Shown here: one piece after another, positions 7,606 to 48,811 of the stretch
Layout of the letters: every line of letters starts with the position of its first letter
Numbering within the stretch: position 1 is the stretch's first letter
Virus record (IMG/VR): IMGVR_UViG_3300036846_000743
Span: 1 to 64,000 of that record
DNA: 64,000 bases
Strand: one strand, 5' to 3'
The notes under the pieces: model-generated
What the model saw: the letters and a program-made list of their open reading frames with translations, nothing else
What the model was told of the DNA's origin: nothing
Databases searched by the model: none
Translations under genes and position numbers: made by a program

Positions 7606-9387
7606 TCAACCTTGTTTGATCTTGGGAACCGGGAATAGCAAAGTCGGGGTATCAGGCGGCAGGAATGTCCGCTTGAGCAGCACCCAACACGCCGGGTTGA
7701 ACATGAGCACCTTCACGTGCTCGCGTTCGAGTCGTTTCATGCGGAACACGGGGATATACAGGGGCGGCACCTCGATCCCTTTCTCCTCGGCCTCGAGCCG
7801 CGCGACTGTGTTCTTAACGACCTTGACGTTTTCCGCGCGGCAAAGCCGCTTCATCCATAAGGATGCCTTGCCGTAGTCTGGACAGTGATCGAGGCCGAAC
7901 GACTTATCGGTCAGCTTGGGTGCCCGCTTGAGGGCATCGGCCACGCCGTCCATCTCGACGTATTCCTTGGCCGTGGCGAACATCTGATGGCTCGGCAGGA
8001 TCAGCTGAATCGTCTGCCGGGACAGCTCCAGCTGCTCACGGTTGCTGACGGCAATGTCGGCCAGCCGGGCCACGGCCCCGGTCATGGTCGCAATCAGCTC
8101 GGCCAGCTCGCCGGGAGGAGCGCCATGGGCCTTGACGGCCTTCAGGACGATCGGTTCGAGCGTCGCCGGCAATTCCTCCAGGATGATCGCGCGGAACGCA
8201 GCACGCAGCTCCTCGTCCGTCAGGCCGGTCTTGGCACCAGGCGCTTTGTAATGGCCGTACTTGCGAATCGACGGCAAAACGTCGTGGTACACCCACCGTC
8301 TGAACCCCTCTGCATCCTTCTTGCGACTGGTCGAGATCAGTCTGTACAAGCCCGGTTCTTTGAGCGTGACGTGAGATTGGGGGCCGCCAGGGGTATCTAC
8401 TACGCGGAGCCCCTTTTCATCGGCAGGAACTCGCGACAGAGCCTGATGAGGTTGGGCGATACCGAGCGCATCGGTGACATAAAGCCCTACCCACTCAGGA
8501 TCTTCGTACGTCCCGAAGGTCGGACACGGATACTTGTCCATGAAGATATCCGGGACGCCTACCAGAGGCTGCTCGACCGGCAATTCGGGCTCGGGTGGTG
8601 GTGCTGAAGCCTCGACTGGCTTCTGGCCAGCCGCGATCGGTATGCCGTCGGCCAGCTGAAGCTCGCCGTCGGGGGCCATCATCGCCAGGCGCGGCAACAG
8701 TCGCGGCTCGGCTGGATGCCGACCCGCCCGCCACTCCGCCCGGTCCTGCGCCGTGGACAGCTGCGCGACGTGGAACGTCATCACGCGGGCTGCATCGTCG
8801 ACGGGGATGTCGAGGAGCGTAGGCTTGGCCCAGCTGGACAGCACCTTCGTGACGGCCGCCGTACCCAGGATCAGGACCGGCGTGACGTCACGCTCCAGCC
8901 TGGCGTCTCTCGCCTTGACCGCCGCCAGGAAGGTGGACTCGGGCATCCTTCTGCGCGTGGCGGTCCAGTGATCGATGGCCTCGTCCCAGGCCATGATCAG
9001 CTCGGCGTGATGCGCCGCGAAGGGGATGTATCTGGGCAGAACGTAGCGGATGAGATTGCGGCAGAACTCGATGTAGCCGCCGACGCGCATGTGGAACGCC
9101 TTCTGGATCAGTCCCTCCACAGCGAAAAGTGTTGTGCTCCGCATTCGCGTCTTGGTGTAGATCTTGTGCGGGTCCGGCACGCGCCGCACGTACTTCTCGG
9201 AGATCCCGCCGGCGATGTCGCTGGTGCTGTACTCGCCGGTAGCCCGGCGGCCGAAGCCGCTCAACCTCGCAACCTGCTGGGCCGGGGCCCAGAGAGTATG
9301 GTCCTGGCCGGGTTCGTGGAGAATGTCGACCTCCACGTCGCCATAGAACAAGATCGTCTGCGTCTCGTAGCCTTGGAGCGCTGGCAT
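7606..9387 (-). CDS. BRO-N domain protein (phage antirepressor-like)
   Basis: PEWVGLYVTDALG...EKGLRVVDTPGGPQSHVTLKEPGLYRLISTSRKKDAEGFRRWVYHDVLPSIRKYGHY is a canonical Bro-N motif; GGAGGAGG RBS. Confidence 0.85.
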   Translation of the reverse strand: MPALQGYETQTILFYGDVEVDILHEPGQDHTLWAPAQQVARLSGFGRRATGEYSTSDIAGGISEKYVRRVPDPHKIYTKTRMRSTTLFAVEGLIQKAFHMRVGGYIEFCRNLIRYVLPRYIPFAAHHAELIMAWDEAIDHWTATRRRMPESTFLAAVKARDARLERDVTPVLILGTAAVTKVLSSWAKPTLLDIPVDDAARVMTFHVAQLSTAQDRAEWRAGRHPAEPRLLPRLAMMAPDGELQLADGIPIAAGQKPVEASAPPPEPELPVEQPLVGVPDIFMDKYPCPTFGTYEDPEWVGLYVTDALGIAQPHQALSRVPADEKGLRVVDTPGGPQSHVTLKEPGLYRLISTSRKKDAEGFRRWVYHDVLPSIRKYGHYKAPGAKTGLTDEELRAAFRAIILEELPATLEPIVLKAVKAHGAPPGELAELIATMTGAVARLADIAVSNREQLELSRQTIQLILPSHQMFATAKEYVEMDGVADALKRAPKLTDKSFGLDHCPDYGKASLWMKRLCRAENVKVVKNTVARLEAEEKGIEVPPLYIPVFRMKRLEREHVKVLMFNPACWVLLKRTFLPPDTPTLLFPVPKIKQG

Positions 9388-9606: not shown

Positions 9607-10311
9607 TCACGGTAGGTTAGCTGCCAGCGGCTGGCCCATGGCCGCGCGCCAGTAGTCGGTCGGGATCTTGGCCTTGTGACCGGCCTTGTGCAGCGCCGCG
9701 TAGATCGCGGGCGCATCGTCTCCCCACCATGCCAGCGGCAGGTTGGCCAACCAGAACAGCTGGTAGATGTTGAAGTCACGGTCCTGGCCGCCGGTTAGCT
9801 CTACCAGCCGCTCCAGGGCACCGCCGGTCACTTCGAGCTGGGTGAGCTGGCGTCTTTCCGCTCGCTGTGACTCGGTCAGGCGTGGCGAGTCCTGGGACTC
9901 GTCGTGCGGACCGGCTGGATAGGGGCCGCGCCGCTCGAATGAAGCTCGCTGGCCACCGACATCATAGTCTCGTCCAATGCCGAAATACAGATACGGCTCG
10001 CGCATCTGGAAGCACCAGCGCGTAGGGTCAATCACCTGCTTGTCCGGGGTCTCGATCCAGCCGTGTCGCTGGAACGGCCAGCCATGTCTGGGATGCTTCT
10101 TGGAGACCGGACCATAGTAATGCCCGTAGCGATCGACACCCACTACGAGCTTGGCCTTGAGCATCTTGCATGAGATCTCGTGGCATCGGTTCACCCAGCG
10201 ATTGGCCTTGAGTCCGATCGCTTTCTCGACTTCCGCGATCGACGGCAGATCGAGTGCTGTGGTGTTCGAAGCCCCGGCCTTGGGCATGACAACTCTACGG
10301 CGCTTCTTCAT
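9607..10311 (-). CDS. Hypothetical protein, possible transglutaminase/papain-like fold
   Basis: RCHEIS...HGWIE...VIDPT gives a plausible Cys-His-Asp triad spacing; AGGAG RBS. Confidence 0.4.
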   Translation of the reverse strand: MKKRRRVVMPKAGASNTTALDLPSIAEVEKAIGLKANRWVNRCHEISCKMLKAKLVVGVDRYGHYYGPVSKKHPRHGWPFQRHGWIETPDKQVIDPTRWCFQMREPYLYFGIGRDYDVGGQRASFERRGPYPAGPHDESQDSPRLTESQRAERRQLTQLEVTGGALERLVELTGGQDRDFNIYQLFWLANLPLAWWGDDAPAIYAALHKAGHKAKIPTDYWRAAMGQPLAANLP

Positions 10312-10699
10312 GCTTCAACTCCTGCTTGGTGAAATAACCGGATTGCACGCGGCAGCCGCGACGCCTGAGCCAGGCCATCTGCGCCGCGCGTGATGCCATG
10401 GGGTCGTACCTGGCCCACATCGCGATGTGCTGCCGGAGCTGAGGCGTCAGCCTGGTGCCGTGCTTCTCGTAGATGACGCGGAACCGCTCGCTGTTGACGT
10501 AAGTATCGTCGGCCCATCGCAGCACGCGATCCCAGCACCGACTACGGCTGTTCGACAGGGTCCTCGGCGCGTAGACCAGCGAAGCATTATTGCCCATGAC
10601 CATCGGCACGATAGCCATGAACATGCTGGGCGGCTGCGGCGGTGGGGGTGGTGGAGGTGGTGGCGGGGGCGGAGCCCAGCGCGCGGCAAGTGCGACCAT
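10295..10699 (-). CDS. Hypothetical protein with an N-terminal polyproline tract
   Basis: Run of 12 Pro after MVALAARWA; the tract uses mixed Pro codons. Confidence 0.45.
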   Translation of the reverse strand: MVALAARWAPPPPPPPPPPPPQPPSMFMAIVPMVMGNNASLVYAPRTLSNSRSRCWDRVLRWADDTYVNSERFRVIYEKHGTRLTPQLRQHIAMWARYDPMASRAAQMAWLRRRGCRVQSGYFTKQELKHEEAP

Positions 10700-10714
10700 C
10701 AGAGGGATCCTCCT

Positions 10715-11818
10715 TCAGGTTCGTTTATCGCGGAAACAGCCGTAGCGGGCAACAAGCCGCCGGCCTTCGCGGATACTCAAATAGGCGAGAGCATCCTCGA
10801 CCGGCACCCGCGGGTTGATGAGCCCATCGGGATAACGCAGCGCCCTGGCCACGGCAGACACCACCACGCGACGTTTGGGCCTGGGTATGACGACATGGAG
10901 CAAGGGCTTATTGCTCCGTGCCAGCTCGTGCACCTTCTTGGGCACGTTGGCACCGTCGACGGCCAAGATCACCTGATGGACCTGGACCTCCCAGGGATAA
11001 GCATGATCATCGACGCAGCGGAAGTGAATCACTTCGAGCATGCCGCCGCCTGGCCCGGCAGCCTTCAAGAGCGCCTTGGACTCGCTCAGCCGATGAAGCC
11101 GGGCATCGGGCGCGCCACGGACGCGGCTATCCAGGAACGTGCTCAGGCCACAGCGCTGGATCGTGCCGCTGATCAACTGCCCGCTCTTGTCTCCCGTGAT
11201 CCGGACATTCCTCACAGGCTTTGGCACAGATCGCGGCAACCGGAAGGTGAAGATCCGCCGGACCAGGTCGTAAGGACTCTTGCTGCCGACTTCGACGTCC
11301 TTTATACTCCGTATAAAGGACGCCGACTTCTCAGGTTTCGGGCCAGTATCGACCGGCCGGACCCGCCGTTTTACCCCTGGTGGTGACGGAAAGAAGCGCG
11401 AGTCGATCTTCAACCAGTATTGCCTGACGTCGCGCGCCCAGCAGAACGGACAGATCTGCCTGAGCTTGCAAGGTCTACGACCTTCCTTCTTGTCGAAGGT
11501 CATGACAAAAGCCACCGGACAGGACATGGCGTTGGGCAATCGCGACTTCTTGCCAGGCAGGTTGAATGGCTTCCAGCCCGCCTCAGCCAGCTGGACGACC
11601 CTGCGACGCCACAGATGCAGTATCCAGGCCGTGGCATCTGAGATATCAGCGTCGCTCCTGAGCCGGCCGAAGGTGGGCCGCAGAACCGCGGAGAGCTGAA
11701 CCTGGTCTTGGTACCGCAACGGTACCGCCGAGACCCTGTAACCGGGATTGGGCGGCCTCTTGCGAAACCTGGAACCGTCCGATGGAGACGCCTCGACGTC
11801 TAGGAGCTTGTCTGACAT
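10715..11818 (-). CDS. Rep_1-like (pC194/pUB110-type HUH) protein with degenerate motifs
   Basis: In order: MSC-x16-CKLRQICPFCWAR Cys cluster; IFTFR (motif I-like); GMLEV...WEVQVHQVIL (motif II, QVH for HUH); ALRYP (motif III Tyr); RRLVARYGCFR C-terminal box. GGAGG RBS before MSDKLL. Confidence 0.5.
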   Translation of the reverse strand: MSDKLLDVEASPSDGSRFRKRPPNPGYRVSAVPLRYQDQVQLSAVLRPTFGRLRSDADISDATAWILHLWRRRVVQLAEAGWKPFNLPGKKSRLPNAMSCPVAFVMTFDKKEGRRPCKLRQICPFCWARDVRQYWLKIDSRFFPSPPGVKRRVRPVDTGPKPEKSASFIRSIKDVEVGSKSPYDLVRRIFTFRLPRSVPKPVRNVRITGDKSGQLISGTIQRCGLSTFLDSRVRGAPDARLHRLSESKALLKAAGPGGGMLEVIHFRCVDDHAYPWEVQVHQVILAVDGANVPKKVHELARSNKPLLHVVIPRPKRRVVVSAVARALRYPDGLINPRVPVEDALAYLSIREGRRLVARYGCFRDKRT

Positions 11819-12251
11819 GGGACCTCCGTGGGGCCATTTGGGGCAGTTTGCGACAGTTTTCGCCAGATGCATTTGACCACGGAATGAGTGACATACGCTT
11901 GTCGCAATCATTCCAGGCTGCGCAAGTCTTGAAGGGTTCGAGACTTCTGGAGAATTAAACAAGTTGCACCAAGTGTTGCAACTATTGAAGCCTCGGACGC
12001 AAGTACTTGCTGGTATTGGTTTTAGTTAGCCTAAATATGGGAAGAAGACTTGTCAAGTCACTAGCCTATTGTTTTTTGCTAGTGACTACTACGTAGATAA
12101 CTTTTTGTGAGAGGTCGCCGCTTCGCGACCTCCCTCTCACAAAAACGGAAAACTTTTTTGTTCGCTTTTTCGATCCGGTACCCAAGTCCTAGCGCCACCA
12201 TCTCGCGCGCCGATCCGGCGAAGCCCTTGAGTCGCCGTCACGGCACCGAGA

Positions 12252-12290
12252 TGCTACTTCCGAGGTAGCATTGCTACTTCCGAAGTAGCA
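12252..12290. repeat. Tandem pair of 19-bp palindromic units TGCTACTTCCGA(G/A)GTAGCA
   Basis: Two copies at 12252-12270 and 12272-12290, differing at one position. Confidence 0.9.
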
Positions 12291-12968
12291 AACCTGCGGG
12301 ATCTAGCGCTATGTTAAGTCCCACAGGTTTTCGTCCTGAATTCCCGGGAAGGGGGAAATTCTTTCATCCGGCTTTCCCTATAGGGCCCTGTTTTTGGTTT
12401 TTTGAGACCCTACTCTCTTGTTTAGTGTTCACAGTGAACGCTCGCGTTCACTGACGTGAACGTTCACGTTCATACCAGCCAGCTAACTGTTCGAGGAACA
12501 GTGCGCACATGCCTAAGAGGATCCCCAACTGCTGATCGAGGCTGGTCTTTCATTTGCACCCGTCAGTCTTCCACTTCAGGGCTCGAGCTTTTCACAAAGA
12601 CCGGTTTTTCCCTCGAACTTTTTCATTTCGAAGTCAAAGTCTTTCGTGCGGCTTTCCCAGGAGGTCTGTTATCTAGCTCTAATGTTTAGATCCCCAGCCA
12701 GCCAGCGCTGGTTGGCCGCCAACCAGCGACAACCAGCGACAGCCAGAGCTGGCAGGCCCCTGAAGCGCGCAATCCATTGCCGCGCCAACAGCTTGGCGCG
12801 GCTCCAGTTGCGCCGCCAGCATTGGCGTCTGGCTTCGCTGATCACTTGGAGTAGTGAATGTTGGTTTTTCACTACCTTGACTTTCCGAAAGGGACTTTCC
12901 GTTCAGCAAAGTTCCGCTGGTTCATGAACCGGCGATGAACCAGCGAACCAAGAAACTTCGCTGAACTC

Positions 12969-13011
12969 GAGGGTTGGTTTTCCAACCCTGGGAGGGTTGG
13001 TTTTCCAACCC
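12969..13011. repeat. Tandem pair of 20-bp hairpin units GAGGGTTGGTTTTCCAACCC
   Basis: Identical copies at 12969-12988 and 12992-13011; each folds as GGGTTGG-TTTT-CCAACCC. Confidence 0.9.
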
Positions 13012-13174
13012 ATCTGGCGCAAGTCCGATGCAGATCCTATTTTCGCTCCGATGAAGATCCGATGATCGAGCGGTTGCTAGCCTTAATATTTAGGCACTAC
13101 TAGGCATGTGCGCACCGAAGCGTCCCGATGCGACTGGAGACGTCGCCAGCCGCTCAAATGTAACCAGAATGTGG

Positions 13175-13513
13175 CTATTCCTGGACTCTGCTGGACTTTG
13201 CTGGACCGACAACAGGGCCTTTGCTCATCAGTTCGAGAATGGTGGCCGAGACCTTGGTCTCGTCGAGATAGTCGGCGGGATCACTCCCGGAGAGAGCGCG
13301 CCGGACCTTGGTCTCGATGTCTACCACATCGAGCACGCCGATCGCCACCTCGGCGTGGTACATATCGAGCGCCAGCTCGGCAGCGTCGCTGCGAGAGCCG
13401 GCCTTGACCTTGTAGGTATGAGTGCCCAGGCCGGCCTCCGAGTCCATCTCAGCATCATCGATTGTGCAGCCTTCAGCCAGGGTCACAGTCACTTTCACGT
13501 CATAGGCAGTCAT
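13175..13513 (-). CDS. Hypothetical protein
   Basis: AGGAGG RBS; acidic 112 aa ORF. Confidence 0.6.
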   Translation of the reverse strand: MTAYDVKVTVTLAEGCTIDDAEMDSEAGLGTHTYKVKAGSRSDAAELALDMYHAEVAIGVLDVVDIETKVRRALSGSDPADYLDETKVSATILELMSKGPVVGPAKSSRVQE

Positions 13514-13543
13514 CAGGACCTCCTTGAATACGCAGCGTAACGG

Positions 13544-13744
13544 TTAAAGAACAGGATCGTTGGGGTCGATGTCATCGAGCACGTCTTGGCCGGTCTCCAG
13601 GTCGACCAGGGTCTCGACCGACGTCTCTCCATGGATGTTCAGTGCCACCTCGACGAAGGCATCCGCCGGGCTCTCAGCCTCGACCTCGATGTCGAACGGG
13701 CCCTTGCCGCCAGTTCCGGTAGCTCGATATTTGCGCACAGCCAT
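13544..13744 (-). CDS. Hypothetical protein
   Basis: AAGGAG RBS; 66 aa. Confidence 0.55.
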   Translation of the reverse strand: MAVRKYRATGTGGKGPFDIEVEAESPADAFVEVALNIHGETSVETLVDLETGQDVLDDIDPNDPVL

Positions 13745-14492: not shown

Positions 14493-15080
14493 TTACCGTA
14501 GATTCAAGGTCCAATAGGCGCCGAGGCCGGCGATACCCATCCAGCGCGCTGTTGGGTCTAACAGCGCTGCTCGATGACCAGCTGAGTTTAGCCACATCGA
14601 GCCGATGTTCGCGAACGAACCATAGGCCGCGTTCTGACGGCGAGCTGGGCCCATCACGAAGTGGCCCATGCCCCGGGCTGCCTGGTGGTTGTTGTTCTCG
14701 GCAGCCCAACTCGAGAGATTCGGGTCGTGACCGACCGCCGACAGGCCATAAGCAGCCCGGGTGGCGTTCAGCCAGCTCAAGAACCCGTAGGGATCAGTCG
14801 ATACCTCCGTGACCGGCTGTGTCGTGGCGACAGGCATGGTCGTGGTGGTAGCAACGGTCGTTGCGGCAAGAACGGCTTGCCCAGCGGCTGGATCAATTGC
14901 CGGCGGCACTTCAACAGTGCGATTGTCGATCCGCCGGAACTTCGTAGTGATCACCCAGCCATTCCCGTTGAGCTTACCGTAGCCTTCCCAGCCAGGTTGG
15001 TTAGTCAGCCGGAACCACTGAGGTTGATCTGACTGCGAACCTTGACCGAGAGCGACCAGAAGAAACAGCGTTGCTAGCAT
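14493..15080 (-). CDS. Secreted CAP (SCP) domain protein
   Basis: Signal peptide MLATLFLLVALGQG, Thr-rich linker, then LSWLNATRAAYGL...WLNSAGHRAALL...GIA CAP signature. Confidence 0.8.
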   Translation of the reverse strand: MLATLFLLVALGQGSQSDQPQWFRLTNQPGWEGYGKLNGNGWVITTKFRRIDNRTVEVPPAIDPAAGQAVLAATTVATTTTMPVATTQPVTEVSTDPYGFLSWLNATRAAYGLSAVGHDPNLSSWAAENNNHQAARGMGHFVMGPARRQNAAYGSFANIGSMWLNSAGHRAALLDPTARWMGIAGLGAYWTLNLR

Positions 15081-15115
15081 CTCATTCTCCGTACAAAAGT
15101 GTCGAAAGTCCTCAG

Positions 15116-15151
15116 AAAACGACGGACGGCCGACTATAGCGGCCGCCCGCT
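15116..15151 (-). terminator. Terminator-like hairpin
   Basis: Minus strand GCGGGCGGCCG-CTATAGT-CGGCCGTCCGT followed by CGTTTT, just after the stop of 15196. Confidence 0.5.
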
Positions 15152-15195
15152 GCGATGGGGAGTCCAATCTGCCCATCAGCATCCACGCATGGTGG

Positions 15196-15720
15196 TCACT
15201 CGAAGTCGCACGCGACATCGCTGGGGAACGCGCAGTCCTTGTCGCAATGCCTGCACCCCAGTCGTTCGTTGTGGCTGCCCTCATCGGCGACGTCATAGCG
15301 GCTCCTGATCATCAACGTGTCCTCCTTCAGGCTGATCAGGTCGCGCATGCTCGAGACATCCTCCACGTAGAAGAAGTTGTCGAGCCCGGTCGTGTGACAG
15401 TACGGACATTCCAGGTCATCTTCCTCGCCGGCTGCACCAGCCAGCGTGATAACCTCAAGCATCTTGTTCTGGCTTTGTTTGGGCTCTAGCCGCAGCAATG
15501 TGTAGTCCAGATCGAACAGCTCCCCGTCGAACTCGAGGGTGTATCGCGGCTTGCCGTGAGCGATATAGACCTGGACGATCTCGCCGGTCTTGCCCTGGCA
15601 TAACTTGAGACAAGCCCTGGGCACAGGTTCCAGGATCATTTCGAGATCCTTGCCGGCGTAGAGTTGCACCTTTCGGCCCAGCAACCTGGTATGCAGCTGG
15701 GCTCCTGTATCACTCGCCAT
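15196..15720 (-). CDS. Hypothetical protein with a C-terminal zinc ribbon
   Basis: CPYC...CRHC pairs; GGAGG RBS. Confidence 0.55.
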   Translation of the reverse strand: MASDTGAQLHTRLLGRKVQLYAGKDLEMILEPVPRACLKLCQGKTGEIVQVYIAHGKPRYTLEFDGELFDLDYTLLRLEPKQSQNKMLEVITLAGAAGEEDDLECPYCHTTGLDNFFYVEDVSSMRDLISLKEDTLMIRSRYDVADEGSHNERLGCRHCDKDCAFPSDVACDFE

Positions 15721-16060
15721 GTGGTACCTCCGTAATTCCATCGGGACCTAGCCCGATCGACTCGAGAATGGCAGGCAGACAAGCTGCCGCCTTTTCATGG
15801 ATAACTTTGGACCCTCGTTCGGCAAACTGGACCTGATCGGGGTCGATCAGGTCCAGCGTGTAGTCGGGCGGATCGAATGAATGGTTGATACTGTAGTTGT
15901 CATGGTCAGTGATGTCCCGCCCAGTTCGTTCCCGGTAGATCGTGGCCGCTTTGGGGTGGGCCAGGATCGCGCAGGAGCTGCCGCTCCTGGTCTGGGCGTT
16001 GATCTTACTCAGGATTCTTTGCAGGGCCTTCCAGTCGGTCCTCGTCAGAACAATGACCAT
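15710..16060 (-). CDS. Hypothetical protein
   Basis: ORF tiling with GGAG RBS. Confidence 0.5.
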   Translation of the reverse strand: MVIVLTRTDWKALQRILSKINAQTRSGSSCAILAHPKAATIYRERTGRDITDHDNYSINHSFDPPDYTLDLIDPDQVQFAERGSKVIHEKAAACLPAILESIGLGPDGITEVPHGE

Positions 16061-21055: not shown

Positions 21056-23908
21056 CTAACCGCACGGCCCTGGATTGCCGCAGTTGTCGCAACGATAGCA
21101 GCGGGCCCCGTTGGGGACCATGACCGTGCCGCAGATGCGGCATGGCGGTCCCGTGAGCCGGGCCGTGGCCAGCCGTGAAGCCGTCATGGTAGCAACGCCA
21201 TTGCTTATGCTGTTGCCAGCGACGATAGTCGTCGATACAGGCTTCACATCGAAGTGATCTTCCGAGTGCCGCACGGGCACATTCTGCTCACGGTAGCCGG
21301 GGATGAACCGCATGCCCATCCATCTGAAGATGTAGTCAACGACACTCCGGGCAATAGGGATGTCCGGGTTCTTGGTGAATCCTGATGGATCGAACCGGGT
21401 GTACGTGAATTTGTCGACGTAGACACCGATGGGCACGCCGTATTGGAGGCCCATCGAGATCAGGGTGCCGATGGTGTCCATCAGCCCGCCGACGGTTGAT
21501 CCCTCCTTGGCCATCGTGATGAATAGCTCGCCAGGAGTGCCGTCGTCGTAGAGGCCGACGATCAGGTAGCCTTCGCAGTTACCGTCGATCGTAAACTTAT
21601 GGGTTACCGACCCGCGGGTATCTGGTAACCGGCGTCGGTAGGGCGCCGTCTGGATGGCCGCGGCCACCGTCGCCGCCATTGTTTCGATCTCCTGCTTCAT
21701 GACCACCGGCTGGCTCCCCTTGGAGCCATCCCGGAATATGGCCAGAGCTTTCAGGCCCAGCTTCCAGCCCAGCAGGTAGGCATCCCTGATCTGGTCGACC
21801 GTCGCGTCGGCCGGCAGGTTACAGGTCTTTGAGATCGCCCCCGAGACGAATGGCTGGGCCGCCCCCATCATCTTGACGTGGCCCGCGAACGGTATCGATC
21901 GCTCACCACTGGCCGGCACGAAAGCACAGTCGAAGACCGGCAGATCATGAGTCTTCATGTAAGGCGCGCCCTCGATCGTGCCGGTCTCCTCCATGTGGGC
22001 CAGGATCGCGGTGATGTGCTCAGGCTTGTAGCGCAGAGCTTCGAGCGCAATCGGCACCGTGTGATTGACGATCTTGAGCTGTCCGCCGCCGGCCAGGTTC
22101 TTGTACTTCACCAGGCCGATCTCGGGCTCGATGCCGGTGGTATCAGCTCCCATCATGAAAGCGATCGTGCCGGTGGGCGCGATCACCGAGATCTGACTGT
22201 TGCGATAGCCATGGGCCTGGCCGGCGCTGATGACCTCGTTCCATACCTTCCAGGCAATATCCGTCAGCTCATGATCGACCGACCCGGGATCGATCGCGAG
22301 CAGCGCACTACGATGCAGCTCCATGACCTTGAGCATCGGCTCACGGTTCTCGGCAAAGCCCTCGAACGGCCCTGCGACGCTGGCCAGCTCGGCTGAAGTC
22401 AGGTATCCCTGACCAGTCAGGATAGCTGTCAGGGCAGCGCAGGTAGCACGGCCCTCGGGGCTGTCGTAGGGCTTGCCCATGGCCATGATCAGGGCGCCCA
22501 GGTTGCAGTAGCCCAGGCCCAGCGGCCGGAAGCGATGACTGTTCTCGGCGATCTTGGGCGTCGGATAGCTGCCGTGATCGACCAGGATCTCCTGGGCCGT
22601 GATCATGATCCGGCAGGCTGCGCGGTAACGGTTCACATCGAATGAACCGTCTTCTCGCCGGAACTTCATCAAGTTGAGCGAGGCCAGATTGCAGGACGTA
22701 TCGTCCAGGAACATGAACTCACTGCACGGATTCGATGCGTTAATAGGACCGGTGTTGGGACACGTATGCCACTGCTGGATCGTGTCTTCGTACTGGAGCC
22801 CGGGGTCGCCGCAGGCCCAGGTACCCGTAGCGATCTTGTCCATGAGATCGACCGCGCTATAGACCGGCATCTCGCCGACGGGCGTGCCGGGCACGACCGG
22901 TACTGTCTGCCACTGAGCCCCATTATCAGCGGCCCGGAGGAATTCGCCGGTAGCCCGGACGCTCATGTTGCAGTTCTGGTAACGAACCGAAGCATAAGCC
23001 TCGCCATTGAAGTCGGGATCGTAGCCGGCGGCAATCAGGGCCTGGGCCTTGCGTTCTTCTTTGGCCTTGGCCTCGATGAACTCCAGGATATCTGGATGAG
23101 TGCACTTGAGTGACTGCATCTTGGCCGCGCGCCGGGTCTTGCCGCCGCTCTTGACCGTCGAGGCCACGCCGTCGTAGATCTGCATGAAGGACACTGGACC
23201 TGACGCCATGCCACCGCCTGAAACTTTCTCGCGGCTCGACCGGAGCGTCGACAGGTCGGTACCCGTGCCTGAGCCATACTTGAAGAGCATGGCCTCAGAG
23301 GTCGCCAGAGTCATGATGCCTTCCATGTCGTCGGTGACCGACTGGATGAAGCAGGCCGAGCCCTGGGGGTGCTTGTAGGCGTCCCCGGGCTGGACCTTGA
23401 CCGTGCTCTCCGTCTTCCGGTCCCAGTGCCACGACCGGCTGGTGCCCTGGATGCCGTACTGGTGATACAGCCCCACGTTGAACCAGACAGGCGAGTTGAA
23501 GGCCGCATACTGCTGGAGCAGCAGCACCACCAGTTCGTCGAAGAAGATGTCGGCGCTGGCCTGGTCGCAGAAGATCCCGTAGCTGATGCCCTGCTGGGTG
23601 ATCGTGCGCGCCACCCGGTGCACCAGCTGGCGGACGCTGCTCTCGCGCTCGGGCCGGCCATCTTCCAGCTGTCTTTGCGAATCACCGTAGAAGTACTTGG
23701 ATACCACCACGTTGGTGGAAACATCAGTGTAGCTGGCCGGAACTTCGGCATCGTCCTGCCGGAATATCTCCTGGCCCTTGTCATCGCGGATGACAGCCAT
23801 CCGTTTGGTCCAGCGAACCGACTCGAATGGATCTTGGCCCTCTTTGCTGAAGATGCGCTCGAAACCCAGCCCCGCACTGGGGGCTGCCGTGACCGCTACG
23901 GTATTCAT
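21056..23908 (-). CDS. nrdJ: Class II (adenosylcobalamin-dependent) ribonucleotide reductase with C-terminal TSCPD and zinc-ribbon domains
   Basis: FNSPVWFN, SACFI, NASNPCSEFMFLDDTSCNLASLNL, IAPTGTI, GAISKTCN, RRRLPDTRGSVTHKF, CRICG...CDNCG; AAGGA RBS before MNTV. Confidence 0.95.
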   Translation of the reverse strand: MNTVAVTAAPSAGLGFERIFSKEGQDPFESVRWTKRMAVIRDDKGQEIFRQDDAEVPASYTDVSTNVVVSKYFYGDSQRQLEDGRPERESSVRQLVHRVARTITQQGISYGIFCDQASADIFFDELVVLLLQQYAAFNSPVWFNVGLYHQYGIQGTSRSWHWDRKTESTVKVQPGDAYKHPQGSACFIQSVTDDMEGIMTLATSEAMLFKYGSGTGTDLSTLRSSREKVSGGGMASGPVSFMQIYDGVASTVKSGGKTRRAAKMQSLKCTHPDILEFIEAKAKEERKAQALIAAGYDPDFNGEAYASVRYQNCNMSVRATGEFLRAADNGAQWQTVPVVPGTPVGEMPVYSAVDLMDKIATGTWACGDPGLQYEDTIQQWHTCPNTGPINASNPCSEFMFLDDTSCNLASLNLMKFRREDGSFDVNRYRAACRIMITAQEILVDHGSYPTPKIAENSHRFRPLGLGYCNLGALIMAMGKPYDSPEGRATCAALTAILTGQGYLTSAELASVAGPFEGFAENREPMLKVMELHRSALLAIDPGSVDHELTDIAWKVWNEVISAGQAHGYRNSQISVIAPTGTIAFMMGADTTGIEPEIGLVKYKNLAGGGQLKIVNHTVPIALEALRYKPEHITAILAHMEETGTIEGAPYMKTHDLPVFDCAFVPASGERSIPFAGHVKMMGAAQPFVSGAISKTCNLPADATVDQIRDAYLLGWKLGLKALAIFRDGSKGSQPVVMKQEIETMAATVAAAIQTAPYRRRLPDTRGSVTHKFTIDGNCEGYLIVGLYDDGTPGELFITMAKEGSTVGGLMDTIGTLISMGLQYGVPIGVYVDKFTYTRFDPSGFTKNPDIPIARSVVDYIFRWMGMRFIPGYREQNVPVRHSEDHFDVKPVSTTIVAGNSISNGVATMTASRLATARLTGPPCRICGTVMVPNGARCYRCDNCGNPGPCG

Positions 23909-24222
23909 GTCTGGTTCCTTGGGATCAGCAGGGAATACGGAGTCTCCTCGGGGCCGGCCTCGCGGTGAGGCGGCTGATGAAGTGCATCGCTCAGGCGGCT
24001 CTTGCCAGTCCCGAAGGACCGTTGGCATGCGAGGGCCGCCTGATCATATCGCACCTCCGTGTAAAGCCCGGTGCTCCATCAGTGAACAACAGTCGGCGTG
24101 GCCCGCTGGGTGTCATGCCCTGCCGCCGACCGTCTACCGGGGGTTTATCCTACACGGCGCAGGCCACCTGGCCAACCCAGGCCCTGTCGCGATCTAGCAG
24201 TTATGCCGCAACTGTAGGTATA

Positions 24223-26490: not shown

Positions 26491-26700
26491 TCACAAGCAA
26501 AGGTTCAGTGTTGATCGGTTGCTGGAAATGATCTCGGCCTTCCAGCCTTCGATCCGTGCGTCGGACAGGGCCTCGATCGCCTGGTGCTTGGCATCGGCCG
26601 GATTGGCAGCGACGCCTTCCCAGGTGCCATGGGGGTGCCAGATGCCGTCATCATCCCGCCAGTAAACGGCGACCTTGTAAGCCCTCGGTGATCTATTCAT
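26491..26700 (-). CDS. Hypothetical protein
   Basis: AGGAG RBS; 69 aa. Confidence 0.5.
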   Translation of the reverse strand: MNRSPRAYKVAVYWRDDDGIWHPHGTWEGVAANPADAKHQAIEALSDARIEGWKAEIISSNRSTLNLCL

Positions 26701-27457
26701 TGCGATATCCGTCTCCTTGAAAAAACGCGGCTAATTCCTCGGGGTCGGGGCCCCAGTCAAACCGTGGGTAACGGCAACGACGAGGATCATAGGGTGGCAA
26801 CGATCCGCAATACTTGGCCCCGTAGACGCCGACGAAGAGCCCATTCCACCACCACTTGTCGGCTTCATAGTAGACCTCGACGTCGCTTCTGAGATTCGCG
26901 GTGAACAGCTTCCAGTGTGCCAGGGGATGCCATGAGCGAGCGGGCCGTGCAATCCGCATGCCTTCGCGGACCTGGAACGTATTCCAGTCGTCAACGACCA
27001 CGATACACGTGTCGGCCAGAGCGGGGGCAAGATATTCGATGGCGCGCTGTGTACCGGCCGTGCTGTGATCGGCGTCATAGAAAAGCACGTCGATCGGTGG
27101 CAGCCGATCGAGTTGAACTTCCCAGAGCGTGCTAGCGATCAGTTCGACCGGTGCCATTTCTCGATGTGCCGCCAGGTTAGCCTCGCAAATATCCTGCCCG
27201 CCGAACAGCTGGAAGTTATCGATCGTGATGAACCGGCCGTGATTGCCGTAGCTGGCTGAGAGCGCGGTGGCTCCATAGAATGTGCCTACTTCAAGGAAGT
27301 GGCAGTCATCGAAGCTGCACAGGTTATTCAGGAGCCGGCGATTCATCGCCGAGCTGAGCCCGTGGATGGCCAGCACGGACTCCGGGACCTTGGATACCCC
27401 GCGATAGGCATCAGCGATGGCACAGGTCGCATGCATGACGAGATCGACTGGCTCCAT
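26693..27457 (-). CDS. Class I SAM-dependent methyltransferase (Methyltransf_24-like)
   Basis: FLEVGTFYGATA, ITIDNF, IDVLFYDADHS, CIVVVDDWN. Confidence 0.85.
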   Translation of the reverse strand: MEPVDLVMHATCAIADAYRGVSKVPESVLAIHGLSSAMNRRLLNNLCSFDDCHFLEVGTFYGATALSASYGNHGRFITIDNFQLFGGQDICEANLAAHREMAPVELIASTLWEVQLDRLPPIDVLFYDADHSTAGTQRAIEYLAPALADTCIVVVDDWNTFQVREGMRIARPARSWHPLAHWKLFTANLRSDVEVYYEADKWWWNGLFVGVYGAKYCGSLPPYDPRRCRYPRFDWGPDPEELAAFFQGDGYRNE

Positions 27458-27518
27458 TGTGCGGGGCTCCTCTCGCGTTGTAGCATCGGGCGGGGCCTGA
27501 AGTTCAAGGGAAGATAGC

Positions 27519-29459
27519 ATGTCGGTTGGGATCAAGACACCAGGCAAAGATGAACGAGTTGCGGAGCGACGTCTCAGAGAGACAGCCGCGGCACTGGCCG
27601 ATCTCAAGAAAGTCGAGCAAGACGGCCGCGCAATCAGCGACGTCGATCGGATCATCGCGATCCGGAAGCTGTGCGAAGCTGGCTCGATCCACACTCTGGA
27701 ACCGCTTCTGCCGCTCCTGTTCAACCTGAACGGCCGGCCATACAGTCTCTACGACTACTTCCCGTTCAGCCCGGTCTTCCGGACCCGGATGCCAACCAAC
27801 CTGGTCTTGATGACCGGCCGGCAGGTCTCAAAGTCCACATCGATGGCCAGCCATGGCGTGGCCCTGTCCAATTCGATCCCTCACTTCTCGACCCTGTTCG
27901 TCACGCCCCGCTACGAGCAGATTCGCCGGTTCTCGACCGAATATGTCGGCGCCTTCATCAAGCAGTCGCCGGTACGGGACCTGTGGGTCTCGACCGAGAC
28001 CACCGGCAACGTGCTCTTGCGCACGTTTAACAACGGCTCCCGGATGTTCTTCTCGTTCGCGCTGCTCGATGTCGACCGGGTCCGCGGCATCCCCGCCCAG
28101 AAGGTCGGCATCGACGAGGCCCAGGACATGGACCCCGATCACGTCCCCATCATCCGGGAGACCATGTCGGCATCCAAAGAATATGGGATCACCCAGGTTA
28201 CGGGCACGCCCAAGACGCTCGACAACCTCATGCACGGCGAGTGGATGCGGTCGAGTCAGGCTGAATGGTTCACGCCCTGCTTTCGCTGCGGCGCCTGGAA
28301 CATCGCCAGCCTCGAATATCATCTCGAAGCGATGCTGGGCCCGTTTCACGACGATATCTCCGAGGCCAACCCAGGAACGATCTGTCACAAGTGCCGGCGG
28401 CCTATCAACCCACGCTATGGCCGGTGGGTACATCGGCACCCTGATCGCCGCTGGAGCCGGTTAGGGCTGCATGTGCCCCAGCCGATCATGCCCCTGCACT
28501 ATGCGATCCCCAAGAAATGGTCCGAGCTACTCCAGAAACGGGAAGGGGCTGCGAATACGGCCCCACACGTCTTCATCAATGAGTCACTGGGCGAGTCGTC
28601 GGCCACGGGCAATCAGCTGGTCACCTTGCCTGACCTCCAGGAGGCGGCCGAGCTGGACTGGGAGAACAATCCCCTGGAACCGCACCCGGACGTGATCGCA
28701 CGGCTGTCTCGCTACCGGATGATCGTCATGGGGGTCGACTGGGGCGGTGGCGGCGAAGACGGGGTGTCCTTCACCGTCCTGGCCCTGCTCGGGTTTCGCC
28801 ATGACGGCAATATCGACGTGATCTGGGGCCGGCGGCTCCTGAACCCTCACGAGCACATCAAGGAAGCCGAAGAGATCTACAAGTACTACCAGCTGTTCAA
28901 ACCGACTTACATCGCGCATGACTACACCGGGGCCGGAATTCTCCGGGAGACCTTCCTGATCCAGGCTGGAATTCACATCGACCGGATCTTACCGATCCAG
29001 TACGTCCGGTCGGCAACGCACTCGCTCATGACATTTCACCAGGCCACGCCCCAGCACCAGCGATCACGGTATTCGCTGGACAAGACCCGCAGCCTGATCT
29101 ACGTGACCTCGGCGATCAAGCTCAAGATGATCCGGTTCTTCAAGTACGACTACAAGTCCGACGATATACCGGGATTGCTCCACGACTTCCTGGCCCTGAT
29201 CGACGAGAAACGGCCGGGAACCCACGCAGGCGACATTTACCTGATCAAGCGAGCCACCGGCTTCACCGATGACTTTGCCCAGGCAGTTAATATCGGCTGT
29301 GCCACGCTCTGGCATGCCAACGATGCCTGGCCCAACTTCGCCGCCGGCGCCAATTACCGGCTTACTCCGGATCAGGTGCGCCAGGCCGGGAATGTCGATG
29401 TTGGCTGGACTGACGACGATGTCCGTGCTGATGCCGGCGGATATTTCGCGAATCCATGA
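27519..29459 (+). CDS. terL: Terminase large subunit (GpA-like ATPase, zinc finger, RNase H-like nuclease)
   Basis: Walker A GRQVSKST, Walker B VGIDEAQD, coupling motif TGTPKT, CFRC...CHKC, nuclease MGVDWGGG and C-terminal DDFAQA. Confidence 0.85.
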   Translation: MSVGIKTPGKDERVAERRLRETAAALADLKKVEQDGRAISDVDRIIAIRKLCEAGSIHTLEPLLPLLFNLNGRPYSLYDYFPFSPVFRTRMPTNLVLMTGRQVSKSTSMASHGVALSNSIPHFSTLFVTPRYEQIRRFSTEYVGAFIKQSPVRDLWVSTETTGNVLLRTFNNGSRMFFSFALLDVDRVRGIPAQKVGIDEAQDMDPDHVPIIRETMSASKEYGITQVTGTPKTLDNLMHGEWMRSSQAEWFTPCFRCGAWNIASLEYHLEAMLGPFHDDISEANPGTICHKCRRPINPRYGRWVHRHPDRRWSRLGLHVPQPIMPLHYAIPKKWSELLQKREGAANTAPHVFINESLGESSATGNQLVTLPDLQEAAELDWENNPLEPHPDVIARLSRYRMIVMGVDWGGGGEDGVSFTVLALLGFRHDGNIDVIWGRRLLNPHEHIKEAEEIYKYYQLFKPTYIAHDYTGAGILRETFLIQAGIHIDRILPIQYVRSATHSLMTFHQATPQHQRSRYSLDKTRSLIYVTSAIKLKMIRFFKYDYKSDDIPGLLHDFLALIDEKRPGTHAGDIYLIKRATGFTDDFAQAVNIGCATLWHANDAWPNFAAGANYRLTPDQVRQAGNVDVGWTDDDVRADAGGYFANP

Positions 29460-34024: not shown

Positions 34025-34042
34025 CAATCACGGAGGTCTTCA

Positions 34043-34318
34043 ATGAACATGCTGTACTCGGCGATCACGATCCTGATCGCCGTCACTTCGCTGCCGATCG
34101 TGTTCGCGGACGTCAGCTTGCTGACCGTCGTCATAGTTGTAGCCGCATTCCTGATCGCCGGTGCCCTGATTGCCCTGCTCGACAAGTTTCTGGGCGAGAA
34201 GATCGGTTACCCACGATGGTTTGTGCACATGGCTTACGGACTGCTGGCCCTGATCGTGGTCCTGTACTTGTGCAAGGAATTCGGGGTCTTCCAGTTGCTC
34301 AATTCAGTGCGAGTATAA
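34043..34318 (+). CDS. Small multi-pass membrane protein
   Basis: Three hydrophobic stretches; GGAGG RBS. Confidence 0.65.
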   Translation: MNMLYSAITILIAVTSLPIVFADVSLLTVVIVVAAFLIAGALIALLDKFLGEKIGYPRWFVHMAYGLLALIVVLYLCKEFGVFQLLNSVRV

Positions 34319-48315: not shown

Positions 48316-48451
48316 GCTTATCTTTCTGTTGGGGTGGGAGACTTGGGTATTGGCAATCTCGTTGTTGGGGATTGGCTTGGTGGCGAACTCAGCGCCGGGT
48401 ATTTCTGCTAAGCGAGTTCTGCGACGTGGAACTTCCAGTAAACAACCGTAT

Positions 48452-48667
48452 TTACTGGTCAACCTTTTCCAGCAGAACCGCGAGCCAACCAGCGGTGACT
48501 TCAATCGACCTCGAATGGGAGTTAGTAGAATGAGCAACACCAGTGGATCCAACGGATGTCATGGACCTAACGATCCAACCTTGTTTGAGTAACTCGGTGA
48601 GATGTTCCTTAACATCTAGCTCGTTGGGTTTCTGCGTAGTAAGCCCGATCGTGATCAGTTTCTGCAC
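48452..48667 (-). CDS. DUF4177-like small protein
   Basis: LTELLKQGWIV...WLAVLLEK; GGAG RBS. Confidence 0.5.
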   Translation of the reverse strand: MQKLITIGLTTQKPNELDVKEHLTELLKQGWIVRSMTSVGSTGVAHSTNSHSRSIEVTAGWLAVLLEKVDQ

Positions 48668-48763
48668 TTCAACATTTCTCCAATGGCCGAACGATAAAGC
48701 TCACTTGTTCGGCCGGCACAAGTGAGCTGTCTAGGACATAGGGTGAGATATAAGAAAAAGGGT

Positions 48764-48795: not shown

Positions 48796-48811
48796 GTGCA
48801 AACAAGTTAGA

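What the first reader, a model, noticed from the sequence alone, without database searches (positions are those of the whole stretch)
10715..13170. Rolling-circle Rep_1-like HUH protein beside a hairpin-packed 1.2 kb locus: candidate origin or processing system in a large dsDNA phage
Seen: the protein has, in order, a C...CKLRQICPFCWAR cluster, IFTFR, GMLEV...QVHQVIL, ALRYP and RRLVARYGCFR. Known (recalled, not aligned): pC194/pUB110 Reps have C...FCKxRLCPxCxWRR, FLTLT, EVT...HxH, AKYxxK and RLISYGG, and HUH enzymes act on ssDNA hairpin origins. Here HUH reads QVH and the Lys after Tyr is missing, so the protein is either a variant nickase or a catalytically dead origin binder. Its gene starts right next to the only long non-coding, hairpin-rich region in the window. 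Inference: a plasmid-type initiator repurposed for large-phage replication initiation or concatemer processing. This is the best candidate for an undescribed system here.
Basis: partly seen in the sequence, partly recalled or inferred. Interest (0 to 1): 0.8.

Follow-up and report, generated by a model that had tools for sequence, protein, structure and literature searches.

The report
Diverged Rep-like gene with conserved hairpins
A large soil phage carries an uncharacterised gene that looks like a very distant, histidine-less relative of plasmid rolling-circle replication initiators. A small three-hairpin DNA element always sits just upstream of it, so the pair may be an initiator with its target site, but this is not proven.

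Summary
The gene is real, but it starts at ATG 11818 (367 aa), not at TTG 11962. It belongs to an unannotated family of 747 proteins (E<=1e-3) and is a syntenic core gene of 160-230 kb soil phage contigs.

Sequence tests against Rep_1 fail. No Pfam hit was found, and hhalign gives about 1% probability. Three indirect lines still point to Rep_1 or G2P-type HUH initiators: protein-language-model neighbours, Foldseek hits among viral models, and a collinear set of motifs. Those motifs are a 4-Cys ribbon (CPFCWAR) and an almost invariant R-Y-P tyrosine.

The family consensus at that spot is x-V-R-Q.

The 1.36 kb non-coding stretch is truly hairpin-rich: 8 of the window's 39 long perfect stems, with folding z-scores down to -8. 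Only a 92-nt three-hairpin module next to the gene (12055-12146, minus strand) is conserved. It is single-copy and co-oriented with the gene, 23 of its 29 pairs show compensatory changes, and it persists down to 31% protein identity. The remaining ~1 kb varies between relatives.

Best reading: a Rep_1-derived protein paired with its own cis hairpin site, either origin-like or autoregulatory. Whether it nicks DNA is unknown.

The parts
10715..11818 (-). Gene for a 367-aa Rep_1-like protein. It has an N-terminal helical region, a 4-Cys ribbon (C100, C117, C123, C126; CPFCWAR) and a C-terminal alpha/beta domain (about residues 176-367) with conserved W276, R281/Q282, R316, Y329-P330 and a C-terminal RRLxxxYGxFR motif.
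   Evidence: ORF. 28 close homologs and 747 family members at E<=1e-3. Start supported by homolog lengths and a GGAGG sequence before the ATG. AF2 pLDDT 83.9 for the whole protein and 88.5 for the C-terminal domain. Conservation table.
11819..12027 (-). Leader between the promoter-like block and the start codon, about 210 nt. It contains a conserved CGACTTGCGTTCGAGG-type small hairpin and an AGTTGCAAC palindrome (11962-11983).
   Evidence: Alignments A3 and A6. Shared TTGCAACACTTGSTGCAAC module with L002 and L060.
12028..12056 (-). Promoter-like block: TTGACA (12056-12051), a 17-nt spacer containing the conserved CTTCCCAT, then a weak -10 (TAGGCT, 12033-12028). It occurs once in the window.
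   Evidence: Conserved in A3 and A6. Unique in the window. It does not pass the tool's sigma-70 criteria, so promoter function is inferred, not shown.
12055..12146 (-). Conserved three-hairpin module. Hairpin 1 (about 12102-12146) is a T5...A5-flanked long stem with a 3-4 nt purine bulge on the 5' arm and an apex, GTCGC-GRAGCG-GCGAC (12114-12129), identical in the six closest relatives. Hairpin 2 (about 12082-12097) is short in the window. Hairpin 3 is 12056-12087.
   Evidence: Covariance model R1 scores the window at 72.7 bits. It independently finds L060 (51.9 bits, E 2.8e-8) and L082 (29 bits, E 1.8e-3) and no other copy in the window or the distant loci. 15/29 and 23/29 pairs show compensatory changes, and 90-93% of cells are paired against 38-55% for slid controls. 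The apex 16-mer is unique in the window and in each locus.
12147..13174 (.). Lineage-variable, GC-poor stretch rich in hairpins and palindromes. Many units come as tandem pairs (12252-12290; 12432-12472; 12969-13011), as direct-plus-inverted repeats (12697-12757; 12915-12945) or as single hairpins (12779-12802; 12848-12877). The stretch 12480-12720 is unstructured.
   Evidence: Repeat list, z-scores, stem counts. Only short modules are shared with relatives, at shuffled positions and orientations. No conserved ORF. The hairpins lack the T-runs of the phage's own terminators.

Best explanation
The locus is a two-part cassette that is conserved in a lineage of 160-230 kb soil phages.

(i) The first part is a 367-aa protein. 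It is most likely a deep offshoot of the Rep_1/G2P branch of the HUH rolling-circle initiator superfamily. It keeps the N-terminal 4-Cys zinc ribbon, an RRM-like alpha/beta core and the motif-3 tyrosine (R-Y-P). It has replaced the metal-binding His-U-His with x-V-R-Q.

(ii) The second part is a single-copy, co-oriented 92-nt module of three hairpins immediately upstream of the gene's promoter-like block. Its pairing is kept by compensatory substitutions, and the apex of its first, bulged hairpin is identical in the six closest relatives.

I infer that the protein recognises this module as a folded single strand or an extruded cruciform. It would use the module as its cis site, either to start DNA synthesis there (origin-like, with Y329 as a possible nucleophile) or to bind it and control its own expression, as plasmid Reps do at origins that overlap their promoters.

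The other ~1 kb of hairpins and paired palindromes is a fast-evolving intergenic zone. It is built from reshuffled short modules and is not a conserved part of the system.

Shown: the gene family, the synteny, the residue conservation, the structured module and its linkage to the gene. Inferred: homology to Rep_1, the protein-hairpin interaction, and any nicking or replication role.
For: - Family and synteny. There are 28 close and 747 wider homologs, none annotated. The same neighbourhood (class II RNR ... sigma-like ... this gene ... Bro-N/Ant) occurs in contigs of 160-231 kb.
- Rep_1 leads. ESM Atlas nearest named clusters are all Rep_1-type for the whole protein (0.94-0.96), for family member P0065 (73/100 clusters, 0.97) and for residues 176-367 alone (52 Rep_1 plus 33 G2P of 100).
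- Structural leads. BFVD Foldseek gives 3 hits at E<1e-3 with probability 1.00, and replication initiators dominate the named hits.
- Motif collinearity. The zinc motif aligns with pC194 CKNRFCPVCAWRK. hhalign aligns residues 255-364 with pC194 133-249 and places Y329 on Y214.
- Residue conservation. The 4 Cys are in >=142/145 members, R316 in 138, Y329 in 138 and P330 in 135.
- Module. It is found in 8 independent genomes upstream of the gene on the same strand, down to 31% protein identity. It shows strong covariation, occurs once in 64 kb and is absent from chance 16-mer matches in IMG/VR.
- Not a terminator. Hairpin 1 is flanked by T5 on the 5' side and A5 on the 3' side, on either strand.
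Against: - There is no significant sequence or profile link to Rep_1.
- There is no significant match to solved structures. HUH domains (6q1m, 7y56, 1l2m) appear only at E 0.7-1.2 among generic RRM-like folds.
- The family has no HUH histidines, and the residue aligned with pC194 Glu210 is Arg. Canonical HUH chemistry is therefore unlikely.
- More distant homologs (27-38% identity) lack the module, and one has no upstream gap at all.
- There is no GC-skew inflection at 12-13 kb in the 64 kb available.
- There are no read-level or RNA data. The only run holding this DNA is kept as contigs.
- The position just upstream of a promoter-like block fits plain cis-regulation equally well.
Confidence: 0.45

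Rival explanations
1. The three-hairpin module and the whole hairpin-rich stretch are ordinary cis-regulatory DNA or RNA for an early or middle transcription unit: operators, an attenuator, or RNA stability or processing hairpins. Under this reading the protein, whatever it does, does not act on them.
For: The module abuts a conserved TTGACA...CTTCCCAT block, and a GGAGG-led gene follows. G-T wobbles favour the gene-sense strand 8 to 3, as expected for an RNA of that strand. Many units in 12147-13174 are perfect palindromes in tandem pairs, like operator arrays. Length and content vary between relatives, as regulatory intergenic DNA does.
Against: The tool's sigma-70 scan finds no promoter here. 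Hairpin 1 has no 3' T-run although this phage uses canonical terminators elsewhere. The module occurs once in 64 kb and is strictly tied to this one gene family across deep divergence, which is unusual for a general regulatory motif. The wobble count is too small to be significant.
Confidence: 0.3
2. The protein is an exapted, catalytically dead Rep derivative. It would be a zinc-ribbon DNA or RNA binder, for example a transcription regulator or a structural origin-binding factor, with no strand-transfer activity.
For: Both His residues of HUH are lost across the family, and the position aligned with pC194 Glu210 is Arg. The gene sits among early-type genes (Bro-N/Ant, sigma-like factor, RNR) rather than in a small replicon.
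Against: Tyr329-Pro330 and several Arg residues are almost invariant in 145 members. That pattern is hard to explain for a mere binder and is typical of a catalytic Tyr with phosphate-contacting arginines.
Confidence: 0.3
3. The protein is unrelated to HUH/Rep_1. The motif resemblance (CxxCxxR ribbon, a Tyr on a helix, a beta-strand pair) is convergent, and the fold is a generic RRM/ferredoxin-like sandwich with some other function.
For: All alignment-based tests are non-significant. The top PDB Foldseek hits are Cas6e, Cas5, carbamoylase, HPPK and CutA at the same weak level as the HUH domains. By the tool's own caveats, Atlas scores are leads only.
Against: Three independent Atlas queries, including the C-terminal domain without the zinc motif, return only RCR-initiator families. 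The named BFVD hits are dominated by replication initiators. hhalign repeatedly returns the same collinear alignment.
Confidence: 0.2
4. The hairpin-packed stretch 12147-13174 produces small structured RNAs (regulators or anti-defence decoys), or it is the phage's packaging or partition site, independent of the neighbouring gene.
For: The stretch shows extreme local structure on both strands, tandem pairs of near-identical hairpins and no coding potential. One hairpin (12848-12877) is 90% conserved in L002.
Against: There is no Rfam match and no RNA data. The content is mostly not conserved. The terminase gene is 15 kb away. No read ends or variant joints are seen, although only contigs were available.
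Confidence: 0.1

Closest known systems
Rep_1 (PF01446) rolling-circle initiators of pC194/pUB110-type plasmids
   Same: Both have an N-terminal C...CxxRxCPxCxxR zinc motif. The order of beta-strand motifs is the same, followed by a helix carrying a conserved Tyr and a C-terminal R-L/I-x-x-Y/G-G motif. A hairpin-containing cis site lies just upstream of the gene. Rep_1 clusters are the nearest neighbours in protein-language-model space.
   Different: The window protein has no Pfam hit and no significant profile match. His-U-His is replaced by x-V-R-Q, Glu210 of pC194 corresponds to Arg, and K-Y-x-x-K is R-Y-P. It is encoded in a ~226 kb phage genome, not a 2-5 kb replicon. The hairpin bears no resemblance to the pC194-type CTTGATA nick site; that nick-site sequence is from my own knowledge.
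HUH initiators of double-stranded DNA phages (P2 gpA, corticovirus PM2 P12) and REP_ORF2-G2P (PF23343) proteins
   Same: These are precedents for a rolling-circle-type initiator serving a dsDNA phage, with its origin close to or inside its own gene (established knowledge). G2P-type clusters are among the Atlas neighbours of the C-terminal domain.
   Different: Those proteins keep HUH and one or two catalytic Tyr residues, and they belong to phages of 10-35 kb. No sequence similarity to them was detected here.
Rep-Arvir/Rep-SNJ2 with its downstream hairpin origin (PMC13107129)
   Same: The discovery logic is the same: an unannotated viral protein recognised only through structure, paired with an adjacent essential DNA hairpin that serves as the origin.
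   Different: According to that paper, Rep-Arvir has the TBP-like Rep_trans fold and is unrelated to HUH. It is an archaeal pleolipovirus protein and its function was tested experimentally. Nothing here has been tested.
Circovirus/nanovirus Rep with a degenerate HUH (H-U-Q)
   Same: It shows that one His of HUH can be replaced in an active enzyme (my own knowledge, not tested here).
   Different: In the present family neither His is conserved, and Arg/Gln occupy the strand.

Membership tests
Rep_1 (PF01446) | Match to the Pfam model above its gathering score | tested here: not met
   0 families even at E<=10 for the window protein. 0 of 42 family members hit Rep_1 at E<=1. The positive control pC194 Rep scores 198.7 bits.
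Rep_1 (PF01446) | Significant profile-sequence or profile-profile similarity to bona fide Rep_1 proteins | tested here: not met
   hmmsearch with a Rep_1 HMM against 175 family proteins gives a best score of 8.6 bits. hhalign of family alignments (26, 42 and 145 sequences) against 11 Rep_1 sequences gives probability 0.7-1.5% and E 0.03-0.09, although the alignment is collinear.
Rep_1 (PF01446) | N-terminal zinc-binding motif C...CKxRxCPxCxWRR | tested here: met
   C100, C117, C123, P124, C126 and R129 are present in >=140 of 145 members. A local hhalign places RPCKLRQICPFCWARDVRQ on NSCKNRFCPVCAWRKARK. In the Rep_1 alignment C37, C60, C65 and C68 are invariant.
HUH endonuclease superfamily | His-hydrophobic-His metal-binding motif on the central beta-strand | tested here: not met
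   At the aligned positions 279/280/281 the family has variable/V/R (Arg 110, His 12 of 145). The window's Q-V-H is a minority form. H155 and H157 are invariant in Rep_1.
HUH endonuclease superfamily | Catalytic Tyr on the helix after the HUH strand (motif 3) | tested here: inconclusive
   Y329 is present in 138/145 members (Phe in 4). It lies on a predicted helix (316-326 region) and is aligned with pC194 Y214 by hhalign. Its catalytic role cannot be tested with these tools.
HUH endonuclease superfamily | RRM-like five-stranded antiparallel sheet with flanking helices, similar to known HUH domains | tested here: inconclusive
   The models are confident (pLDDT 83.9 and 88.5). Against the PDB the best E-values are 0.07-0.1, to RRM/ferredoxin-like proteins; HUH domains 6q1m, 7y56 and 1l2m appear only at E 0.7-1.2. 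Against BFVD there are 3 hits at E 3.7e-7 to 9.8e-4, and many named weaker hits are replication initiators.
Rolling-circle initiator-origin cassette | A conserved hairpin-forming cis site next to the initiator gene | tested here: met
   The three-hairpin module is found upstream of the gene in 8 genomes. 23/29 pairs show compensatory changes, and independent covariance-model hits occur in L060 and L082.
Rolling-circle initiator-origin cassette | Site-specific nicking with a covalent Tyr-DNA intermediate and ssDNA replication intermediates | not testable with these tools
   No isolate, no reads and no RNA data are available. The only run holding this DNA is stored as contigs.
Rolling-circle replicons (plasmids, ssDNA phages) | The initiator is encoded on a small circular replicon that it replicates | tested here: not met
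   The close family sits in contigs of 160-231 kb with RNR, terminase and Bro-N genes. Contexts of the more distant members are mostly short contigs and are unresolved.

The most novel reading that the evidence does not exclude
The family is an active tyrosine nickase that evolved from the HUH/Rep_1 fold but gave up His-coordinated metal catalysis. It would use an arginine-based active site instead (R281, R316 and others with Y329, analogous in chemistry to type IB topoisomerases and tyrosine recombinases). It would start replication of 160-230 kb phage genomes at a bulged hairpin origin next to its own gene.
Probability: 0.12. Interest if true: 0.85.

Novelty: new variant of a known kind. Interest (0 to 1): 0.55.

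Why it matters
How most environmental jumbo phages start replication is unknown, and this lineage has almost no annotatable genes. A conserved pair made of an initiator-like protein and a covarying hairpin gives a concrete, testable candidate for an origin or a master regulatory site. If the protein still nicks DNA, it would show that the HUH fold can work without its defining histidines. If it does not, it is a clear case of a rolling-circle initiator exapted as a binder in a large dsDNA virus. Either way, a family of about 750 proteins that is currently 'hypothetical' would gain a working annotation.

Tried and rejected
- tRNA, Rfam and phage-database DNA or protein searches of the locus found nothing.
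- PHROGs, NCBIfam and PADLOC found nothing meaningful for the protein.
- A PDB sequence-profile search gave 0 hits at E<=10.
- The terminator reading of hairpin 1 was rejected. It is flanked by a 5' T-run and a 3' A-run on both strands, while true terminators of this phage carry T-runs.
- The idea that the apex 16-mer is a dispersed phage motif was rejected. 33 of 35 IMG/VR matches lack the extended stem and the gene; the remaining two (L025 and L047) are contigs already in the set, the L001 phage and the window's own contig.
- CTCGA enrichment was checked and found not notable.
- No conserved small ORFs are hidden in 11819-13174.
- A transitive structure test (folding a Rep_1 alignment and comparing its BFVD hits) could not be run.
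- Read-level analysis was impossible because only contigs are stored.
- The strand of the structured element was not resolved (G-T 8 against A-C 3).
Full report
**Setting.** The window is the first 64 kb of IMG/VR contig IMGVR_UViG_3300036846_000743 (226,073 nt). The apex motif and the gene sit at the same coordinates in locus L047 and L053 of that contig. It is a large phage genome. It has a class II ribonucleotide reductase (21056-24028, minus strand), a gpA-type terminase ATPase (27519-29459, plus strand), a Bro-N/anti-repressor-like protein (7606-9387, minus strand), a CAP-domain protein and two methyltransferases. Most ORFs have no Pfam or PHROG match. No GenBank phage record resembles the locus at DNA or protein level. 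A Logan contig from a soil-metagenome run reproduces 10700-13600 without a single difference, so the region is not an assembly artefact. That run may be the source sample and offers no read-level information.

**The gene.** The ORF listed as 10715-11962 (415 aa, TTG) is real but over-extended. The 28 close homologs are 329-387 aa, and their alignment begins near the window's MSDKLL. ATG 11818 is preceded by GGAGG in the window, and the relatives aligned at this position show GGAGG (some only GGAG or AGGAG) before their own starts. I therefore take 10715-11818 (367 aa) as the gene. The non-coding stretch is then 11819-13174, or 1356 nt.

A profile search of 1.84 billion representatives finds 747 family members at E<=1e-3 and 307 at E<=1e-10. 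None is annotated, and none of 42 members scanned hits any relevant Pfam family. NCBIfam and PADLOC are also blank.

The close clade is a syntenic core gene. In contigs of 160-231 kb the order is RNR, then a sigma-70-like gene where one is present, then this gene, then Bro-N/Ant. This order holds down to a homolog of 31% identity, P0039 in L082.

**Is it Rep_1-like?** The alignment-based tests fail:
- No Pfam hit is found even at E<=10, while pC194 Rep scores 198.7 bits as a positive control.
- An HMM of 11 bona fide Rep_1 proteins scores at most 8.6 bits on 175 family members.
- hhalign of family alignments (26, 42 or 145 sequences) against the Rep_1 alignment gives about 1% probability and E 0.03-0.09.

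Every hhalign run nevertheless returns the same collinear alignment. Residues 255-364 align with pC194 133-249. The strand pair GxLE.../W-x-V-x-x-R-Q-L falls on G-x-x-R-x-x-E-x-T/H-P-H-F-H-V-L. V-A-R-x-x-R-Y-P falls on E-x-x-K-Y-S-x-K, so Y329 lies on pC194 Y214. R-R-L-x-x-x-Y-G falls on K-R-x-I-x-Y-G-G. A separate local hit places CKLRQICPFCWAR on CKNRFCPVCAWRK.

Three non-alignment lines agree with this picture:
- The ESM Atlas nearest named clusters are all Rep_1, sometimes together with Zn_Tnp_IS91 or REP_ORF2-G2P, at 0.94-0.96 for the whole protein.
- For family member P0065, 73 of the 100 nearest clusters are Rep_1, with a top score of 0.97.
- For residues 176-367 alone, without the zinc motif, the neighbours are 52 Rep_1 and 33 G2P clusters, plus DUF1424 and RepSA. 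All of these are HUH-type rolling-circle initiators.

The AF2 models are confident (pLDDT 83.9, pTM 0.81 for the whole protein; 88.5 and 0.82 for the C-terminal domain). Against viral models (BFVD), three unnamed proteins match at E 3.7e-7 to 9.8e-4. Among the named weaker hits, replication initiators of microviruses, a CRESS virus, a parvovirus (NS1) and protein 1 of Halorubrum pleomorphic virus 1 predominate. Against the PDB nothing is significant. The best hits (E 0.07-0.1) are RRM/ferredoxin-like proteins such as Cas6e. The HUH domains of wheat dwarf virus Rep, a parvoviral NS1 and a geminivirus Rep appear only at E 0.7-1.2. A recent paper compares Rep_1 only through a UniProt-accession model rather than a PDB entry, which suggests that no experimental Rep_1 structure was at hand (PMC13107129). 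That limits what the PDB test can show.

My reading is that descent from the Rep_1/G2P branch is likely, at about 0.7, but membership of Rep_1 is not established.

**The active site.** Conservation across 145 full-length members was tabulated:
- The four cysteines, P124 and R129 are essentially invariant.
- So are W276 (135/145), R316 (138), Y329 (138, with Phe in 4), P330 (135) and the C-terminal R350, R354, G360, F362 and R363.
- On the strand that aligns with HUH, position 279 is variable (Q 30, R 22, E 19, T 15, H 12), position 281 is Arg in 110 and His in 12, and Q282 is conserved (105).

The family has no HUH motif, and the residue aligned with pC194 Glu210 is Arg. An almost invariant Tyr-Pro surrounded by invariant arginines suggests a functional Tyr, but canonical metal-dependent HUH chemistry is improbable. 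Whether the protein nicks DNA or only binds it cannot be decided here.

**The non-coding stretch.** The observation of exceptional structure holds:
- It has 8 perfect stems of >=8 bp in one kilobase, against 31 in the other 63 kb.
- Dinucleotide-controlled MFE z-scores are <=-4 on both strands at 12061-12360 and 12721-13080, down to -8.0. Flanking coding windows rarely pass -3.
- Many units are palindromes or hairpins in tandem pairs, or direct-plus-inverted repeats.
- They lack the 3' T-runs that mark this phage's own terminators at 48.7-48.8 kb.
- There is no tRNA, no Rfam family and no conserved ORF.

The stretch as a whole is not conserved. Relatives have upstream gaps of roughly 270 to more than 900 nt with different hairpins. 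Only short modules are shared, at shuffled positions and orientations:
- GGTAGTGAAAA..CAAC.TTCACTACTCC at 12848-12877, also found in L002.
- GGGAAAGCCGCAYGAAAG at 12641-12661 and 12361-12378; in relatives it lies in the leader of the gene.
- TTGCAACACTTGSTGCAAC at 11963-11981.

**The conserved partner.** What is conserved is a 92-nt module at 12055-12146 on the gene's strand.
- Hairpin 1 has a T5...A5-closed long stem whose lower part covaries. It carries a 3-4 nt purine bulge on the 5' arm. Its apex, GTCGC-GRAGCG-GCGAC, is identical in the six closest relatives.
- Hairpins 2 and 3 differ completely in sequence between genomes but always pair.
- Next comes a conserved TTGACA...CTTCCCAT block that looks like a promoter. 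It does not pass the tool's sigma-70 criteria.

On the MAFFT alignment of six genomes, 90.4% of cells pair and 15 of 29 pairs show compensatory double changes. No shuffle out of 500 reaches this, and slid controls give 39-55% paired with at most 10 such pairs. A covariance model built from those six independently recovers the module upstream of the gene in L060 (50% protein identity; 51.9 bits, E 2.8e-8) and in L082 (31% identity; 29 bits, E 1.8e-3). It finds no second copy in the 64 kb window and none in the loci of more distant homologs. With eight sequences, 93% of cells pair and 23 of 29 pairs are compensatory; this alignment was fitted to the model, so it leans towards the structure.

The apex 16-mer is unique in the window and in each locus. 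Of 35 IMG/VR matches, only the two with the extended stem carry the gene, and both are contigs already in the set: L025 is the L001 phage and L047 is the window's own contig. G-T wobbles favour the gene-sense strand 8 to 3, which is too few to decide between an RNA and a DNA structure. Homologs at 27-38% identity lack the module. In one of them (P0062 in L086) the gene is called with its start overlapping the end of an upstream AcrVA2-like gene, leaving no gap.

**Interpretation.** The best-supported picture is a conserved cassette: a Rep_1-derived zinc-ribbon/Tyr protein plus its own bulged-hairpin cis site. This is analogous to plasmid Reps, whose double-strand origins lie next to and often overlap the rep promoter. 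It is also analogous to the recently described Rep-SNJ2 with its hairpin origin (PMC13107129). The protein could start replication there, or it could merely bind there and autoregulate.

Several points argue against a replication role. The histidines are lost, there is no GC-skew inflection at 12-13 kb, no experimental or read-level data exist, and the same anatomy fits plain transcriptional control. The variable ~1 kb of paired palindromes is best seen as fast-evolving intergenic DNA, perhaps auxiliary binding sites or small-RNA hairpins, and not as part of a conserved system.

**Verdict.** The Rep_1 resemblance is the best lead and a structured partner element exists. Family membership, the HUH motif and conservation of the whole 1.2 kb locus all fail their tests. 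I rate this a new variant of a known kind, of moderate interest.

Noticed in passing
window 48400-49000 (minus strand): A second, smaller hairpin cluster in a GC-poorer intergenic gap. It consists of canonical intrinsic terminators (GC-rich stem plus T-run) after the gene ending near 48812. This shows that the phage uses ordinary terminators, unlike the hairpins at 12-13 kb.
   Followed up: partly
window 10295-10699 (minus strand): The 134-aa ORF immediately downstream of the Rep-like gene begins with a run of about 14 prolines. It has no family match. A gene of similar size follows the Rep-like gene in all relatives examined.
   Followed up: no
window 12361-12378 and 12641-12661; L002 5886-5906; L004 5894-5912; L060 1980-1996: An 18-21 nt motif, GGGAAAGCCGCAYGAAAG, recurs in this phage group. 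It occurs twice in the window's non-coding stretch, in the orientation opposite to the gene. In relatives it lies in the leader of the Rep-like gene. A short unrelated 428-nt contig in the same run also carries it.
   Followed up: partly
L060 1900-2820: A 50%-identity relative has its own upstream non-coding stretch of >=900 nt. It contains a (GAAGT)n tandem repeat, TTGCAAC-type repeats and a second GTCGC-GAA-GCGAC hairpin about 100 nt upstream of the main module.
   Followed up: partly
L086 363-2568: In a distant homolog (P0062) the Rep-like gene is called with its start overlapping the end of a gene whose product hits PF26125 (AcrVA2-like). There is no intergenic gap.
   Followed up: no
contig of P0002 (ENA ERZ26871208, 177 kb; no DNA available): The closest homolog outside the window (61% identity) sits beside a phage-integrase fragment and an 1133-aa Ser/Thr kinase with WD40 repeats. 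This context differs from that of the other relatives.
   Followed up: no
L058 (Candidatus Kuenenia stuttgartiensis MAG contig CAMDPK010000032.1): This is the only hit in 185,579 species genomes: a 29%-identity match to the N-terminal region in a planctomycete MAG. It may be a prophage or a binned phage contig, and it may hint at the host range of the wider family.
   Followed up: no
window 13095-13113 and L005 280-298: An exact 19-nt match (GCGCACATGCCTAGTAGTG) links the far end of the window's non-coding stretch to the leader of the Rep-like gene in L005. This suggests a partial duplication of leader sequence at 13.1 kb.
   Followed up: partly
window 26693-27724 (minus strand) and 34021-34980 (plus strand): Two Methyltransf_24-domain proteins lie in the region around the terminase gene. 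One also resembles sugar O-methyltransferases (CmcI/TylF).
   Followed up: no
window 14493-15296 and 15196-15741 (minus strand): A CAP/SCP-domain protein ORF overlaps the upstream 181-aa ORF by about 100 nt, so its real start is probably further downstream. CAP-domain genes occur at the same relative position in L002 and L006.
   Followed up: no
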